From Thecamonas trahens ATCC 50062 (Eukaryota; Protista; Apusomonadida): 8,792 nucleotides of DNA. This document shows, piece by piece, positions 34-8,677 of the stretch. Below the pieces are notes generated by a model. The model had not been told where the DNA came from. It saw only the letters and a program-made list of their open reading frames with translations, and made no database searches. The translations under genes and the position numbers were made by a program. The number at the start of each line of letters is the position of its first letter. Position 1 is the stretch's first letter. The stretch covers positions 1-8,792 of the forward strand of contig NW_013657594.1 in assembly GCF_000142905.1 (NCBI RefSeq), given 5' to 3'.

Positions 34-2672
34 ATGACGGCCATTGGCACCATTGCACGCCCCACTTTGACGACTTTGGTTACTCATGTGCCGAACTCGG
101 GTCGGCACAAGTACAACCAGAGTGATAGTGATACCCTCTCTCCCTCCCTCTCTCCCTCCTTCACTCACTCTGTTGTGTTCTTGATGTGATACGGCTGCTC
201 TCTCCTTCGATCTCAATGTGTCCGGGGCGGACGGGTGGACTGCCGCATCTTGTTGATGCGCCATGGCTGACCTGGTACTGGCTTGGCTCTGGCTCGGCTC
301 TGGCTTGGCTCGGCTTGGCTGGGACTCTTGTTGATGCGACGGGGTTGATGCGCCATGGCTGACCTGGTACTGGTTTGACTCTGGCTCGGCTCTGGCTTGT
401 CTTGCCTTGGCTGGGACTCTTGTTGATGCGACGGGGTTGATGCGCCATGGCTGACCTGGTACTGGTTTGACTCTGGCTCGGCTCTGGCTTGGCTCGGCTT
501 GGCTGGGACTCTTGTTGATGCGACGGGGTTGATGCGCCATGGCTGACCTGGTACTGGTTTGACTCTGGCTCGGCTCTGGCTTGGCTCGGCTTGGCTCGGA
601 CTCGGCTGTCGATGCGCTTGCCCATGCGGGTGACTGCTCTCCCACCTGTCATGTCCTGGCTCATGTCGGCGGTTGGCTGGGCTCATCTCTCTGAATGCCG
701 TGGCACATGTTGGCTCGGCTCGGTATGCAGCTCGGATGGCTCGCATCACGGGCCAACCAAGGATCGCGGGTGCACGGATATTCTCTTCCTCCTGTTGTTC
801 ATTCTGTTCTGGGTGGGCATGGTGGTTGTCGGCTCGATGGCCCTCGACCGCGGCCAGCCAGAGCGGCTGCTGTACGGTACCGACTCGTACGGAAACCTGT
901 GCTCGAAGCAGAACAATGATGTGTCCGACGGCGAGCCGTGGCGCGACATGCGCGGCAAGAGCAAGCTGTTCTTTGGCAACCCGTTTGTACCGGACAAGCT
1001 GCAGGTGTGCGTTTCGGCGTGCCCGACCGAGTTCTCCAAGAACACCGGGCTCACCCGTGCCGATGTCGAGTGCCGCGTCAATACCACCGACGACTCGACT
1101 AACTACTTTACCGCCACCTGGCTCCGCGGGTGTGTGACCGACGACAACTGCCCGTGCTACATCCGCTACCCCTCGTTCGAGCTGCTCAACCGGTGCATCC
1201 CGGGCCCCGAGTTTGACAATGAGACCCGGAGCGAGATCGCGAACTCGGAGGCCGGCGAGACGGTGCGCGAGATGCTGGGTGATGTCATCAACGCCAAGTA
1301 CATCATTCTGGCGTGTGCCGGCGGCGCGCTCCTTCTCTCGTTCATCTGGCTCATCATGCTGCGGTGCTGCGGCGGGTTTATGGTGTGGACTACGGTCGTA
1401 CTCACGGTAATGGCCATGATTGCCGTCACCGCGTTGTTCATTGTCTATGCAGGGCGGGCCAAGGAGACGTACGATGAGCGCAAGGCCGAGGGGACAGAGA
1501 CGACACGTCTCCGTGCCAACTACATGACGCTTTATGTTCTTGGCGGCCTCGGCGGTCTCATTGTCTTTATCGCATTCCTCGCCCTGCTCTTTATGCGGAC
1601 CGAGATCAACCGGGCCATCGAGATCGTCAAGGAGGCAGCGCGGACGCTCGGGCACATCCCCATGCTCGTCTTCTTCCCTATCTTTGTGGTCATCGTTCTC
1701 GCGGGCTTCCTCGCCTACTGGGTGGTGGTCATGATCTACCTGGCGACCGCCGGCGACCCGGTCTTTACACGTGTTGGCTTGCTCGATAATGAGCCGCCGC
1801 GGCTGCTCGAGTACAAGGCGGACAACACACTGCGCCAGCTGCAGGCGTACCACGTGTTTGGCGGCCTGTGGACGGTCAACCTCCTCCTCGCCTTCAACGA
1901 GATGGTAATTGCCGGCGCCGTCGCGCACCACTACTTCCGCGAGGGCACCTCGCACATCCTGCGCTTCCCTCTCCTCGCCGCCGTCTGGCAGACGATGCGG
2001 TATCATCTCGGCACGCTCGCCTTTGGCTCGCTCATCATCGCCATCGTCCAATTCATCCGGCTCGTCCTCATCTTTGTGCAGAAGCGGCTGGAGGCGGCCA
2101 ACAACCGGGTTGCAGACTTTATCTTTGCCTGCCTCCACTACGCCTTCCTCTGCCTCGAGCGCTTCCTGAGGTTCATTTCGCGCAACGCGTACATCATCAC
2201 CGCCATCCGCGGCTCGTCGTTCTGCTCGTCAGCGCGGACCGCCTTCCATCTCCTCACGTCGAACGCGCTCTCGCTCCTTGCCCTCACCTTTGTCTCCAAC
2301 TTCCTCATCCTCCTCGGCAAGATCGTCGTTGTTGCCATCACCGGCCTTGTGGGCCTCGTCTGGCTCAAGACCCGCGACGACCTGCAGTACTACGCCATCC
2401 CGCTCATCCTCATCATATTTGCCGCCTACGCCATCTCCGCCCTCTTCACCACCGTCTTTGAGATGACCATCGACACCATCTTCCTTTGCTACTGCATCGA
2501 CCTTGATGAGTACGACGGCCGCTACATGTCGCCCTCGCTCCGCGCCTTTACCGACGCCCACGCTCCGCCGCGAAAGAGCTCCAACTCTGGCTCTCGCTCG
2601 CGTTCGCGCTCACGTACCCGCTCCCGCTCTCGATCCCCGCGCCCGGCCTACGAGCAGCGCTCACACCATTGA
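34..2672 (+). CDS. SLC44A: Choline transporter-like protein (SLC44/CTL family). Predicted exons 34-110 and 731-2672, about 672 aa. The exon 1 frame is open back to base 1, so the true start may lie upstream of the window.
   Basis: Family motifs in the translation: GPTKDRGCTDILF, LLYGTDSYGNLC, RYHLGTLAFGSLIIAIVQ, NAYIITAIRGSSFCSSA, DTIFLCYCID, plus many hydrophobic segments. The TTG start at 591 lies in repeat sequence. Donor AA|GTACAA (111) and acceptor TGCAG|C (730) are both phase 2 and join in frame as SGRHNSDGSHHGP. The family call is firm; exon 1 is less certain. Confidence 0.93.
111..730 (+). other. Predicted intron 1 of the CTL gene (GT-AG, 620 nt)
   Basis: GTAC donor like the peroxiredoxin introns, followed by a C/T tract. 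ACTCAC branch-like motif at 163-168. The first downstream AG is at 729-730, and splicing restores the frame. Confidence 0.75.
248..616. repeat. Minisatellite, 92-bp unit, about 4 copies
   Basis: GTTGATGCGCCATGGCTGACCTGGTACTGG starts at 252, 344, 436 and 528, an exact 92-bp period. Units are nearly identical and contain GGCT(C/T) subrepeats. Confidence 0.97.
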
Positions 2673-5453: not shown

Positions 5454-5589
5454 TGGAACGACCCGACATCCGTCGCCAGAGTCGAGCCCTGCACCTCGGC
5501 AAAAAGTGAGCGTGCAGAACGACATCAATGGCGGGACGGAAGCGGGTACGCAGGCAAGAGTCCGACATGCGCAGTGCGGCTCGGGCGCG

Positions 5590-5644
5590 GCTCCGATCTC
5601 GGCGGCAGGGCCAGACTTGAGGAGCTACGCCGTCAGGGCGAAGC
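5590..5644 (-). promoter_or_regulatory. Weak candidate SECIS element in the 3' UTR of the predicted selenoprotein
   Basis: Lower helix GCUUCG/CGGAGC, core cUGAC/CGAG, and AA 13 nt after UGAC. The upper helix is imperfect and the base before UGA is C rather than A/G. Confidence 0.3.
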
Positions 5645-5717: not shown

Positions 5718-6231
5718 CTAGCCCTCAAACTCGCTGTAAAGACGCTCGACGACGGCGGTAAGATCAGCTGCAATCTCCTTCATGGCCGTCCGCCGAAGCT
5801 TGGGGTACTTTGAGAAAAGGTTGCGCTGCGCCTTGTGCCAGACCACTTCCTTGACAGCGTGCTCTTCGCCGCCGAACGAGACCGCAGTCAGCACGATCTT
5901 GACGCCGGTCGGCGACGGCACACCCTCCACTTCAGTGTTGGGGAATGCCGTCTGCACAGCCTTGGTTGCCGAGTTAAGCTCGTGCGGTGGGGGTGAGTAG
6001 ATAAGGCCGGGGGGGGGGGGGGAGTTGCCATTCAATTTTTTGGTCGGAATTGGCTTGGCCGGGTGATGACGACACTGTGCCGGCAGCAGTAGGCGGGACC
6101 AGGGGGGAGGAGCGGAAGGAGGGGGGGGGGCAGCAAAGAGGTAAGGGGGAACGTATTTGGTAGCCGCCTCACGAAGGCGAGTAGAAGACCGAGATGGAGA
6201 GAAGGGCAGAGTCCTTGAGATTGGCAGCCAT
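5718..6231 (-). CDS. Candidate small selenoprotein, SelW/Rdx-like thioredoxin fold, 112 aa. Exons 6231-6157 and 5981-5718; TGA at 6171-6169 read as Sec.
   Basis: The minus strand from ATG 6231 reads MAANLKDSALLSISVFYSPS(TGA)GGYQ. It joins in phase 0 to ELNSATKAVQTAFPNTEVEGVPSPTGVKIVLTAVSFGGEEHAVKEVVWHKAQRNLFSKYPKLRRTAMKEIAADLTAVVERLYSEFEG. The layout (hydrophobic strand, Y-xxx-U-G, helix ending in FP, strands, VWxK) matches the Rdx family. Confidence 0.75.
5982..6156 (-). other. Predicted AT-AC intron (175 nt) with U2-type signals
   Basis: 5' end ATACGT, poly-C tracts, ACTCAC at 5998-5993, 3' end CCACCGCAC. Splicing restores the frame. Confidence 0.65.
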
Positions 6232-6829: not shown

Positions 6830-8677
6830 ATGTTCCGCACTCTTGGACGCAGCGTGTGCCAGATGGCGCCTGCCATGACCACGGCCTTTGCCAGCTCTGC
6901 CTCGGGCCTTGCTGCCTCGGTCGCCTCCACTGCCAGCATCGGCGCCGCCATCGGCGCCGCCCGCGCCTTCTCGGCCTCGGCTGCCGCCATGACCTCCACC
7001 AAGGTACCTCCCTCTCCCACTCTCTCCCCTCCACCCCCTCGTCCCCCTTCCCCGCCCTGCCTCCCCCCCCCCCCCCCCACCCCACCACCCCGTCCTCTCG
7101 CCGGCCTTTGTCCTGCCCGCGCTGCAGCAGTGACGATCACGATCGAGTGCGATCGTGATCGATCGCGCCATGAGTGACCATGATTGACCATGGTCGACGT
7201 CGGTCGCACAGCCACAGCTGAAACAGGACGCCGCAACTGCTGTCATAGCCACAGTTGCGGCTCCCGATCACTAGCGCTTGCTCTGATCACGCCTATGGTC
7301 ACGATCGTGATCGTCGTTGCTGTGCTTGAGATCAGCCTCTTTCTTCCCTTCCTCCTCGATCATCTACCATGACGATCAGCATCCCTACCTCTCCCCACCA
7401 CGGCTGGCGTCAGCTTGCGGCGTTTGCAATGTGGTTGATTCTCCGCCAATTTGTGGGGCAAGCATCAGCAGGGCCTAGACCATTGACCGAGAATGGCTCA
7501 ATTTGGAAGTGAGGCGAGCGTCATGCATTGACACGAGATTAATGGTAGATGGAACGATTATTGTTGAGGTGGCCACCACCGCACTCACCACCCTTGCAAC
7601 AACCATGGCTGCCTCCTCGTCGTCTGCCTCTGCTCAGATCCAGAAGCCCGCCCCGCACTTTGCCGGCACTGCTGTTGTCGACGGCGATTTCAAGAAGATC
7701 TCCCTCGATGACTACAAGGGTACGTCCTCCACCACTCCCCTCCCCCCCCCACTCATCCCCATACCCCCCCCCCCCCTCCTTCCCACACGCCCTTCCTCCC
7801 GCAGCTGCAGGTCGCCTGCGCTTCATGATTTTTTCCCAACGAAAGCCATGTGGTTGCCGACGCGCCCTCGCCTCCCCTCCCTTTCCCTCCCCCCCTCCTC
7901 CCTCCCCCCTCCTCCCTCCCGTCCACCGCATACCATATCATCTGTTCTCCATTCCCACCTCTGCCTTCTCCGCCTTCTCCGCCATGGCAACGCTGGCACT
8001 GCCAACTGCCGTACTCGGCCAGGCGCTGCGGATCCTAGCCATGATCGATCACCGTTGATCATGAACATGATCACGACCACGACCACGATCATGATCACAA
8101 CCCCCCCCCCCTCCCCTCCACGCACCAACATACTGCTGTCATGGACTCACCCATACCCCCCACCTCCTTTGCGCACCGCACAGGCCAGTGGCTCGTGTTC
8201 TTCTTCTACCCGCTCGACTTCACCTTTGTCTGCCCGACTGAGATCATCGCGTTCTCGGACCGCGTGGAGGAGTTCAAGGCGATCGGCGCCGAGGTTGTCG
8301 GCTGCTCGGTCGACTCTGAGTTCTCGCACCTCGCGTGGATCAACACCCCGCGCAAGCAGGGTGGCCTTGGCGAGATGAAGATCCCGCTGCTCTCGGACAT
8401 CACCAAGCAGGTCTCGCGCGACTACGGTGTCCTCCTTGAGGACGAGGGCATCTCCCTCCGTGGTCTCTTCATCATCGACCCGACCGGCACCCTCCGCCAG
8501 ATCACCGTCAACGACCTCCCTGTCGGCCGCTCCGTCGACGAGACCCTCCGCCTCATCAAGGCCTTCCAGTTTGTTGAGGAGCACGGCGAGGTCTGCCCTG
8601 CCAACTGGACCCCTGGTGAGTCGACCATCAAGCCTGAGGTCGCTGCCTCCAAGGAGTACTTTGAGGCCGCCAACTAA
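6830..8677 (+). CDS. PRDX: Typical 2-Cys peroxiredoxin (AhpC/Prx1 subfamily), mitochondrial-precursor isoform. Exons 6830-7003, 7638-7719 and 8184-8677, 249 aa.
   Basis: Peroxidatic motif [14 protein letters not shown], resolving motif GEVCPANW, and GGLG and C-terminal YF motifs. Exon 2 reads [28 protein letters not shown]. Exon 1 ([11 protein letters not shown]...[15 protein letters not shown]) is Ala/Ser/Arg-rich with no acidic residues, like a mitochondrial presequence. All junctions are GT-AG and in frame. Confidence 0.93.
7004..7637 (+). other. Peroxiredoxin intron 1 (phase 0)
   Basis: Donor AAG|GTACCT, ACTCAC at 7583-7588, and the first downstream AG at 7636-7637 (CTCAG|ATC). Confidence 0.82.
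7605..8677 (+). CDS. PRDX: Alternative short (cytosolic-type) peroxiredoxin isoform. Exons 7605-7719 and 8184-8677, 202 aa.
   Basis: In-frame ATG in a strong context (ACAACCATGG) 33 nt upstream of the intron 1 acceptor. It gives [17 protein letters not shown], similar to the yeast Tsa1 N-terminus MVAQVQKQAP. Confidence 0.65.
7720..8183 (+). other. Peroxiredoxin intron 2 (phase 1)
   Basis: Donor AAGG|GTACGT, poly-C tracts, ACTCAC at 8145-8150, acceptor GCACAG|GC. Splicing yields [12 protein letters not shown]. Confidence 0.93.

What the first reader, a model, noticed from the sequence alone, without database searches (positions are those of the whole stretch)
5982..6156. AT-AC intron with major-spliceosome (U2-type) signals right after the Sec codon
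Seen: the intron begins ATACGT, identical to the peroxiredoxin intron 2 donor GTACGT except at +1. It ends CCACCGCAC, the usual GCAG ending with G changed to C at -1. It has the same poly-C tracts and ACTCAC branch as the GT-AG introns and lacks the U12 signals ATATCCTT and TCCTTAAC. I found no plausible GT-AG pair that keeps both the TGA motif and the following helix in frame. Known: A..C termini are the compensatory alternative to G..G, and U2-type AT-AC introns exist but are rare. Changes at both ends argue against a single sequencing error. An AT-AG variant 3 nt downstream (losing one Glu) is also in frame. Inference: this may be a slow or regulatory intron, or a U12-to-U2 conversion intermediate.
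Basis: partly seen in the sequence, partly recalled or inferred. Interest (0 to 1): 0.8.

Follow-up and report, generated by a model that had tools for sequence, protein, structure and literature searches.

The report
AT-AC intron in hidden selenoprotein gene
A small, mis-annotated selenoprotein gene of the marine flagellate Thecamonas trahens can only match its relatives if a 175-base intron that begins AT and ends AC, but otherwise carries this organism's ordinary splice signals, is removed: a rare but already known kind of intron, not yet confirmed by RNA data.

Summary
On the minus strand, exon 1 (6231-6157) reads MAANLKDSALLSISVFYSPS-TGA-GGYQ. An intron (6156-5982, 175 nt) begins ATACGT and ends CCGCAC. 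Exon 2 (5981-5718) begins ELNSATK.

The organism is Thecamonas trahens. Its public model, AMSG_11474, instead uses a weak GT-AG pair (6189/5979) that deletes the TGA motif.

Three uninterrupted homologous contigs read YSPS-TGA-GGWQ-EL. This matches the predicted junction exactly, and the differences are mostly synonymous. More distant relatives carry CRN-TGA or CRNC at that spot, and Gln-Glu across the junction is kept wherever that stretch is available. That favours AT-AC over the AT-AG alternative.

A CUGA-type SECIS-like hairpin lies 81 nt past the stop. It is built like the one behind a glutathione peroxidase (GPx) gene of the same genome.

The donor equals the local GTACG(T/C) consensus except at +1. 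The branch site (CTACTCAC) and the C-rich body are also local. Resemblance to U12 signals is no better than in control introns.

The best reading is a U2-type AT-AC intron, a new member of a known rare class. There is no RNA evidence. Presence of the minor spliceosome could not be tested because the positive controls failed.

The scan also noted this same stretch under two other entries.

The parts
6157..6231 (-). Exon 1 (coding part): 25 codons, MAANLKDSALLSISVFYSPS-U-GGYQ. The in-frame TGA (selenocysteine) is at 6171-6169, 12 nt before the exon end.
   Evidence: Translation. Aligned codon by codon with L002, L003 and L001, which keep the TGA and differ mostly at synonymous sites, including TCN/AGC serine switches.
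5982..6156 (-). Intron, 175 nt, AT...AC, phase 0, 50% C and 14% G.
   Evidence: Sequence. It is the only in-frame removal that reproduces the homologues' ungapped U-GG(Y/W)Q-EL. Its composition equals that of peroxiredoxin intron 2.
6151..6156 (-). 5' splice site ATACGT. It equals the local donor GTACGT except at +1.
   Evidence: Local donors are GTACCT and GTACGT (peroxiredoxin) and GTACGC (HSP70, SelW-like, GPx). GTACG[CT] is the hexamer most often followed by C-rich DNA in 274 kb. A preference for C at +4 is published for this species.
5993..6000 (-). Branch-site-like CTACTCAC. The presumed branch A is at 5994, which is -13 from the AC end.
   Evidence: The same CTCAC motif lies 17-51 nt before the AG of four control introns of this genome.
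5982..5984 (-). 3' splice site CAC|G. The alternative AG lies 3 nt further on, at 5980-5979.
   Evidence: Using the AG would delete the Glu that is present in every family member where this stretch is available.
5718..5981 (-). Exon 2 coding part: 87 codons (ELNSATKAVQTAFPNTEVEG...EFEG) plus TAG.
   Evidence: It is 100% identical to the public protein AMSG_11474 over 99% of its length, with homologues at 69% and 56% identity.
5580..5636 (-). SECIS-like hairpin in the 3' UTR, 81 nt after the stop. Its parts in order are CUGA-C, an 11-nt arm, unpaired UCAA, a mini-stem, the 11-nt return arm and C-GA-G.
   Evidence: Fold, sequence. It has the same build as the element behind a TGA-containing GPx gene of the same genome and as the SelT-like gene's element. 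A descriptor taken from those other elements gives 13 hits in 497 kb, so 0.01 are expected in this UTR.
6188..6189 (-). GT of the donor used by the public gene model (TCG|GTCTTC). It skips VFYSPS-U-GGYQE.
   Evidence: The protein P0001 reads ...LLSIS|LNSATK. Enumeration. The donor does not fit the GTAC consensus.

Best explanation
This is a genuine spliceosomal intron of the rare U2-type AT-AC class ("AT-AC II"). It sits in a real two-exon selenoprotein gene of Thecamonas trahens.

Shown:
- The gene encodes a small protein with a SelW/Rdx-like thioredoxin-type fold. Its redox motif is S-P-S-Sec, where distant relatives have C-R-N-Sec or C-R-N-C.
- The relatives' protein sequence is reproduced only if exactly bases 6156-5982 are removed, joining ...GGYQ to ELNS...
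- Apart from A at +1 and C at -1, the intron carries this organism's ordinary major-spliceosome signals: donor xTACGT, branch CTACTCAC 13 nt from the 3' end, and a C-rich body.

Inferred from established work on G1-to-A donor mutants rescued by a G-to-C change at the last intron base in yeast and human, as summarised in PMC1557818:
- The major spliceosome recognises the site through positions +2 to +6 and the branch site.
- The A(+1)-C(-1) pair replaces the usual G-G interaction of the second catalytic step, so the AC is chosen rather than the AG 3 nt downstream.
- The two-ended change most simply arose from a GTACGT...GCAG intron by two substitutions.
- Splicing is probably less efficient than for GT-AG neighbours. 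This is not shown.
For: 1. Junction. L002 and L003 (ENA assemblies) and L001 (Logan) are uninterrupted here. They read YSPS-TGA-GG-W-Q-E-L, with no gap against exon 1 plus exon 2. All have 20 codons before the TGA.
2. Family. L042 has C-R-N-TGA-D-G-G-G-Q-E and a canonical AUGA SECIS. P0004 has YCRNCDGGDQE. Gln-Glu is kept wherever the stretch is available.
3. Selenocysteine use. A CUGA-type SECIS-like element lies 81 nt after the stop. L001 has an AUGA...AAA...GA element at 85 nt. The same genome has TGA-containing SelW-like, SelT-like and GPx genes, and one GPx carries a CUGA-type element of the same build.
4. U2-type signals. Five homology-anchored local introns begin GTAC and carry CTCAC or CTTAAC before the AG. 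GTACG[CT] is enriched before C-rich DNA. A published preference for C at +4 with a standard U1 is reported in bioRxiv 10.1101/2022.06.08.495308.
5. Not U12-like. The donor matches ATATCCTTT at 4 of 9 positions. The branch box matches at 6 of 8, the same as control introns.
6. Rival splice pairs are all worse.
7. The class is known: 15 human, 6 mouse and 3 fly cases (PMC1557818).
Against: - I had no cDNA, RNA-seq or raw reads, so removal at these bases is inferred from protein conservation only.
- The public annotation uses a different GT-AG pair.
- The -1 exon base is A, where local donors mostly have G. With A at +1 and C at +4, U1 pairing is weak.
- The branch-to-3' distance (13 nt) is shorter than in the control introns (17-51 nt).
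- Rfam finds no SECIS, although it also misses the SelW-like and SelT-like elements.
- Presence or absence of U11, U12, U4atac and U6atac could not be established, because the U6 and U2 controls also came back blank.
- Whether L001-L003 are genomic or transcript-derived is not certain.
Confidence: 0.68

Rival explanations
1. The public model is right. The mRNA is spliced GT(6189)-AG(5979), giving a 100-residue protein without the TGA motif, either as the only product or as an alternative isoform.
For: It is an in-frame canonical GT-AG pair and the deposited annotation. The AG at 5979 is the first AG after the branch site, and its context resembles the peroxiredoxin intron 2 acceptor (CACCGCACAG).
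Against: - The donor GTCTTC lacks the GTAC(G/C) pattern seen in every checked local intron.
- It deletes 12 residues, including the Sec motif and the Glu. These are conserved, with synonymous variation, in relatives that have no intron there.
- It would leave the SECIS-like element without a purpose.
- Gene callers routinely splice around in-frame TGA codons.
Confidence: 0.08
2. The assembly is wrong at both ends, and the real intron is an ordinary GTACGT...CCGCAG.
For: Changing only 6156 and 5982 to G would give a textbook local intron. I could not inspect reads. The contig is short (12.4 kb).
Against: Two independent substitution errors would have to fall exactly on the two terminal bases and produce exactly the known compensatory A/C pair. 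That is very unlikely. The rest of the gene is clean and in frame.
Confidence: 0.07
3. It is a minor-spliceosome (U12-type) AT-AC intron with diverged signals, or a relic caught in U12-to-U2 conversion.
For: It has AT-AC termini and a GCCTTATC near match to the U12 branch box about 20 nt from the 3' end. Absence of the minor snRNAs was not shown.
Against: - The 5' site matches ATATCCTTT at 4 of 9 positions and fails at +4 to +6, the positions that define the class.
- The branch-box match is no better than in control GT-AG introns.
- The intron is missing from the three closest homologous contigs. L042 has its intron elsewhere, so there is no sign of an old conserved minor intron.
- The lineage is described as intron-reduced with homogeneous major-type signals.
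Confidence: 0.06
4. The donor is the AT at 6156, but the acceptor is the AG at 5979 (AT-AG, 178 nt), giving ...GGYQ|LNS...
For: It is in frame. It uses the first AG after the branch site, in a context like a local acceptor.
Against: It removes the Glu that is present in all family members where this stretch is available, and it shortens the spacing to the FP motif, which is otherwise 11 residues in both this gene and L042. By established second-step genetics, A at +1 pairs poorly with G at -1 (summarised in PMC1557818).
Confidence: 0.06
5. The gene is decaying. A former GT-AG intron has been disabled and the locus is no longer expressed as a selenoprotein.
For: The termini are non-canonical, I had no expression data, and the public model avoids the region.
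Against: Both exons are intact and the TGA is retained. The SECIS-like element is intact, with 10 of 11 arm pairs. The two changes are exactly the compensatory pair, and no other lesions are present.
Confidence: 0.04

Closest known systems
U2-type AT-AC introns ("AT-AC II"; human SCN4A and SCN5A, TAF2; Sheth et al. 2006, PMC1557818)
   Same: They have AT...AC termini. The 5' site equals the species' own U2-type consensus except at +1. They have an ordinary branch site and pyrimidine tract and no U12 boxes. They are extremely rare.
   Different: This case is in an apusomonad, an intron-poor lineage whose donor consensus is GTACG(T/C) rather than GTAAGT. It is not conserved in the nearest homologous contigs, whereas the animal cases are old and conserved. 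It has no experimental proof.
Engineered G1-to-A 5' splice-site mutants rescued by G-to-C at the last intron base (yeast and human, as cited in PMC1557818)
   Same: They have the same pair of terminal changes on an otherwise consensus intron. The expected mechanism is the same: an A-C interaction in place of G-G at the second step.
   Different: Here the pair is natural and presumably fixed. Its efficiency is unknown.
U12-type AT-AC introns
   Same: The terminal dinucleotides.
   Different: The 5' box ATATCCTT and the branch box TCCTTAAC are absent. The body and the branch site are those of local major introns.
SelW/Rdx-family selenoprotein genes (Pfam PF10262; mouse SelW, PDB 2npb)
   Same: They are small beta-alpha-beta-beta-beta-alpha proteins with a redox motif ending in Sec between strand 1 and helix 1, and a SECIS in the 3' UTR. 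The same genome has SelW-like and SelT-like members.
   Different: This gene falls below Pfam's threshold (13.3 against 22.6 bits). The apusomonad members have Ser, not Cys, three residues before Sec. The SECIS core is CUGA. The intron position differs from that of the SelW-like gene, which is split in the Cys codon before the Sec.

Membership tests
U2-type AT-AC (AT-AC II) intron | Intron begins AT and ends AC | tested here: met
   Bases 6156-6155 are AT and 5983-5982 are AC on the minus strand. The boundaries cannot slide, because the flanking bases differ.
U2-type AT-AC (AT-AC II) intron | 5' splice site fits the organism's own U2-type consensus apart from +1 | tested here: met
   ATACGT against the local GTACGT, GTACGC and GTACCT. 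A preference for C at +4 is published.
U2-type AT-AC (AT-AC II) intron | U2-type branch site and pyrimidine tract; no U12 boxes | tested here: met
   CTACTCAC with its A at -13 and 50% C. The U12 comparisons give 4 of 9 and 6 of 8, equal to controls.
U2-type AT-AC (AT-AC II) intron | Splicing at these bases seen in RNA | not testable with these tools
   No transcript of this species was retrievable. Only protein-level agreement with homologues is available.
U2-type AT-AC (AT-AC II) intron | Dependence on U1, U2, U4 and U6, not on U11, U12, U4atac and U6atac | not testable with these tools
   This needs experiments. The snRNA inventory was inconclusive.
U12-type (minor) intron | 5' box (A/G)TATCCTT | tested here: not met
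   ATACGTTCC matches 4 of 9 positions and mismatches at +4, +5 and +6.
U12-type (minor) intron | Branch box TCCTTAAC 10-20 nt from the 3' end | tested here: not met
   The best match is GCCTTATC, 6 of 8. Two of four control GT-AG introns reach the same score.
U12-type (minor) intron | Minor snRNAs present in the genome | tested here: inconclusive
   U12, U6atac, U11 and U4atac were all blank. So were the U6 and U2 controls and two U6 patterns.
Eukaryotic selenoprotein gene | In-frame TGA conserved among homologues and aligned with Cys in a Cys-form relative | tested here: met
   The TGA is present in this gene, L002, L003, L001 and L042. P0004 has Cys there.
Eukaryotic selenoprotein gene | SECIS element in the 3' UTR | tested here: inconclusive
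   Rfam finds none, but it also misses the SelW-like and SelT-like elements. A structural descriptor taken from other SECIS elements of this genome hits 5636-5580, where 0.01 hits are expected. The core is CUGA, not AUGA.
Eukaryotic selenoprotein gene | The organism uses selenocysteine | tested here: met
   There are TGA codons at the CxxU site of SelW-like and SelT-like genes and inside four GPx domain matches.
Rdx family (PF10262) | Pfam score above the gathering threshold | tested here: not met
   13.3 bits (E 0.097) for exon 2 and 13.8 bits for L002, against a threshold of 22.6. P0004, L001 and L042 give nothing.
Rdx family (PF10262) | beta-alpha-beta-beta-beta-alpha thioredoxin-like fold with the redox motif between strand 1 and helix 1 | tested here: met
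   The AlphaFold model of the Cys-form P0004 has mean pLDDT 70.5, with elements E38-46, H53-67, E72-77, E83-91, E94-103 and H111-131. CRNC sits at 47-50. Foldseek hits are weak (E 0.004-0.04): NDUFA2, mouse SelW 2npb and SelW-related 3dex, 2fa8, 2obk and 2ojl.

The most novel reading that the evidence does not exclude
The major spliceosome of Thecamonas trahens tolerates non-GT-AG termini unusually often, and this intron is the first case anchored by cross-species protein conservation. This would fit the remark in PMC11347168 that its annotation holds a large share of non-canonical introns. A related possibility is that the weak AT-AC intron 12 nt after the UGA is kept because slow splicing, or the nearness of the junction, affects selenocysteine decoding or shields the mRNA from nonsense-mediated decay.
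Probability: 0.1. Interest if true: 0.65.

Novelty: new member of a known kind. Interest (0 to 1): 0.4.

Why it matters
U2-type AT-AC introns number about two dozen in the five genomes surveyed in PMC1557818, and none was found in worm or Arabidopsis. A natural example in an apusomonad would be a useful test case. This lineage has few introns and very uniform splice signals. The example would show how far the first-base/last-base pairing rule holds outside animals and yeast.

In practice, it also shows that the public gene model is wrong. The gene callers removed the active site of a selenoprotein that belongs to a small family not captured by Pfam. A correct model needs both UGA recoding and a non-canonical intron. 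Standard pipelines will miss that combination elsewhere too.

Tried and rejected
1. Covariance-model searches of the whole assembly for U12, U6atac, U11 and U4atac were blank. No conclusion about the minor spliceosome can be drawn.
2. Rfam SECIS models found nothing in the window, in the homologues, or in the SelW-like and SelT-like genes of the same genome. The blank is therefore uninformative, and I used a structural descriptor instead.
3. An unsupervised intron finder (codon-usage log-odds plus frame continuity) on 200 kb of contig 3 did not separate GT-AG from decoy dinucleotide pairs. I abandoned it and used homology-anchored introns and the literature for the consensus.
4. HSP70 genes as a source of introns: 11 of 12 loci are intronless, and they yielded one intron.
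5. Repeat or "introner" origin: blastn of the intron against about 280 kb of this genome found only poly-C matches. The whole genome was not searched.
6. A second AT-AC candidate (contig 3, about 89,883) turned out to be CA-rich intergenic DNA.
7. The first metagenome scan found nothing. The second found L042.
8. L041 has an acceptor CAG|GAG at exactly the homologous codon. Its upstream exon is unclear and the contig may be transcript-derived, so I gave it little weight.
9. Literature searches for a statement on minor introns or selenoproteins in Thecamonas found none.
Exons and the pieces on either side of the TGA were handled separately by reference.
11. The large representative-protein search was not used, because the claim does not rest on absence of relatives.

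Full report
**What is there**

The gene lies on the minus strand.
- From ATG 6231, exon 1 reads MAANLKDSALLSISVFYSPS, then TGA (6171-6169), then GGYQ, ending at 6157.
- The next 175 bases (6156-5982) begin ATACGT and end CTACTCACCCCCACCGCAC.
- From 5981 an open frame of 87 codons (ELNSATKAVQTAFPNTEVEG...) runs to TAG at 5720-5718.

**Organism and public model**

The exon-2 protein is 100% identical to AMSG_11474 of Thecamonas trahens ATCC 50062. That 100-residue model reads ...LLSIS|LNSATK.... It therefore splices TCG|GTCTTC (6189) to CGAG|CTT (5979) and removes VFYSPS-TGA-GGYQE.

**Is the TGA-containing exon real?**

- Two ENA assemblies (L002, L003) and one Logan contig (L001) carry homologues that are uninterrupted at this point.
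- They read MAANLKDTALLDVSIQYSPS-TGA-GGWQ-ELDAATKAVQ and MAATDADDVVMDVEVIYSPS-TGA-GGWQ-ELQAATTAIH.
- All have exactly 20 codons before the TGA.
- The nucleotide differences are mostly synonymous. Examples are CCT/CCC, GGC/GGA/GGG, CAA/CAG and TCG versus AGC for serine.
- A profile search added a Cys-form relative, P0004 (...ITYCRNCDGGDQEKRTAIAAV...), and two distant truncated ones.
- A metagenome scan found L042, a contig with its own GT-AG intron. It reads MSSPSFTVTY|intron|C-R-N-TGA-D-G-G-G-Q-E-R-D-T-A-V.
- The family therefore has CxxU, CxxC and, in the apusomonad-like sequences, SxxU forms. The TGA aligns with Cys.

Pfam does not capture the family: Rdx scores 13.3-13.8 bits against a threshold of 22.6. 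An AlphaFold model of P0004 gives the SelW-type beta-alpha-beta-beta-beta-alpha fold, with CRNC between strand 1 and helix 1. Foldseek gives weak hits to NDUFA2, mouse SelW and SelW-related proteins. The splice junction Q|E falls in the first turn of helix 1.

**Selenocysteine decoding**

Rfam reports no SECIS here. It also misses the elements behind the SelW-like and SelT-like genes of the same genome, so that blank means nothing.

Folding shows a hairpin at 5636-5580. Its parts in order are CUGA-C, an 11-nt arm, unpaired UCAA, a mini-stem, the return arm (10 of 11 pairs) and C-GA-G.
- A GPx gene with an in-frame TGA on contig 12 carries an element of the same build, also with a CUGA core.
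- The SelT-like element is AUGAC...CGAC with similar arms.
- A descriptor taken from those other elements (NUGAC, at least 9 of 11 arm pairs, CGA[C/G]) hits 13 times in 497 kb. That gives 0.01 expected in this 388-nt UTR, and none of the 13 reaches 10 of 11.
- L001 has an AUGA...AAA...GA element 85 nt after its stop, against 81 nt here, with a folding z-score of -2.6. L042 has a canonical AUGA/UGAC element.

I regard the gene as a real selenoprotein gene.

**Which bases are removed?**

I enumerated every GT-AG, GC-AG, AT-AC, AT-AG and GT-AC pair that keeps the ATG frame joined to the exon-2 frame.
- Only 6156/5982 (AT-AC) reproduces the ungapped U-GG(Y/W)Q-EL of the relatives.
- The boundaries cannot slide, because the flanking bases differ.
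- AT-AG (6156/5979) drops the Glu. That residue is present in every family member where the stretch is available, and the 11-residue spacing from it to the FP motif is shared with L042.
- GT-AG 6099/5979 and 6075/5979 keep the TGA but insert 19 or 27 proline-rich residues that no relative has. Their donors are GTCCCG and GTGTCG.
- The public pair 6189/5979 deletes the conserved motif and has the donor GTCTTC.

**Which spliceosome?**

Local introns anchored by protein homology:

| Gene | Donor context | 3' end |
|---|---|---|
| Peroxiredoxin intron 2 | AGG\|GTACGT | GACTCAC...CACCGCACAG |
| Peroxiredoxin intron 1 (probable) | AAG\|GTACCT | not recorded |
| HSP70, contig 54 | CAG\|GTACGC | GACTCACCGCAAAACACCACAG |
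| SelW-like gene | CTG\|GTACGC | CTCACTCAC...CCCCAG |
| GPx, contig 12 | AAC\|GTACGC | CTTAAC...CGACAG |

- In 274 kb, GTACG[CT] is the hexamer most often followed by C-rich DNA: 24 of 291 sites, against 9 of 368 for GTGAG[CT].
- A preprint reports that T. trahens prefers C at intron position 4, has a standard U1, and belongs to lineages with massive intron loss and a transformed donor motif (10.1101/2022.06.08.495308).
- The intron here is ATACGT...CTACTCAC, with the A at -13. It is 50% C and 14% G, the same composition as peroxiredoxin intron 2.
- Against the U12 consensus, the donor matches 4 of 9 positions and the best branch box 6 of 8. Two of four control introns also reach 6 of 8.

The sequence therefore says major type.

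I could not establish whether this species has a minor spliceosome. All four minor snRNA searches were blank, but so were the U6 and U2 controls and two U6 patterns.

**Mechanism**

U2-type AT-AC introns are documented: 15 in human, 6 in mouse, 3 in fly, and none in worm or Arabidopsis. G1-to-A donor mutants are rescued, less efficiently, by G-to-C at the last intron base (PMC1557818).

The present intron is exactly a local consensus intron with those two changes. I infer three things, none of them shown:
- It is spliced by the major spliceosome using the A-C terminal pair.
- This explains why the AC is used although an AG lies 3 nt further on.
- It descends from a GTACGT...GCAG intron.

**History**

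- The intron is absent from L001, L002 and L003. If these are genomic, it is either young in the T. trahens line or lost in the others. They come from assemblies and carry 217-457 nt of non-coding upstream sequence that differs between L002 and L003.
- L042 and the SelW-like gene have their introns before the Sec codon, not after it.
- L041 has an acceptor at the homologous codon, but its upstream exon is unclear.
- Nothing points to an old conserved minor intron, and nothing bears on regulation.

**Limits**

- I had no RNA data and no raw reads.
- The spliced coding sequence was never joined, and the TGA was never read through.
- The SECIS statistics use a descriptor I wrote after seeing the elements, although its form was taken from other genes.

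**Verdict**

It is most likely a genuine U2-type AT-AC intron in a mis-annotated selenoprotein gene. That makes it a new member of a known rare class, of moderate interest.

Noticed in passing
window 5718-6231 (-): The public model AMSG_11474 splices out the selenocysteine motif. The corrected product would be 111 residues plus Sec. It belongs to a small family (SxxU, CxxU and CxxC forms) that Pfam does not capture.
   Followed up: yes
window 7203-7246 (-): A second match to my SECIS-type descriptor (ATGAC...CGAC, 10 of 11 arm pairs) lies antisense within peroxiredoxin intron 1, about 1 kb upstream of the selenoprotein gene. No such 10-of-11 match occurred in 497 kb of background. Its meaning is unknown, and it may be chance.
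   Followed up: no
window 6157-6171; L039 about 1700-1990 (-); L042 360-466: Introns lie within 12 nt of the Sec codon in three genes: 12 nt after it here, 7 nt before it in the SelW-like gene, and 9 nt before it in L042. This may be chance, or it may relate to nonsense-mediated decay rules.
   Followed up: partly
L038 (G000 contig 61, 25900-26170, minus): A further Rdx-like gene (IEYCTS-TGA-GYSGRY...) appears to change frame after FEITDYHK. This is either a 1-nt assembly error or a real frameshift. Behind it lies a UUGA-type SECIS-like hairpin.
   Followed up: no
L005-L016 (HSP70 loci of G000): Eleven of twelve HSP70-family loci are single open frames without introns. This fits the published description of this lineage as intron-reduced.
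   Followed up: partly
L041 78-284: A distant homologue (JGI 3300017172) has a strong acceptor, TCGCAG|GAG, at exactly the codon where the T. trahens intron ends. A possible first exon is MGQFLRAE|GTGAGC, which lacks any redox motif. This may be a shared intron position or a truncated paralogue.
   Followed up: partly
L002 100-190 versus L003 70-140: The two ENA contigs encode identical proteins but differ strongly in part of the upstream non-coding region. This suggests two strains or species of an uncultured Thecamonas relative.
   Followed up: no
window 5977-6168 (-): The ATG frame stays open through the whole intron. The next stop is TAA at 5976, so an intron-retaining mRNA would add about 60 proline-rich residues after GGYQ before terminating.
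   Followed up: no
G000 whole assembly: Neither the Rfam U6 and U2 models nor two conserved U6 sequence patterns found anything in the 28.7-Mb assembly. A preprint reports a standard U1 there. The genome-search tool seems unable to find snRNA genes in this genome.
   Followed up: partly
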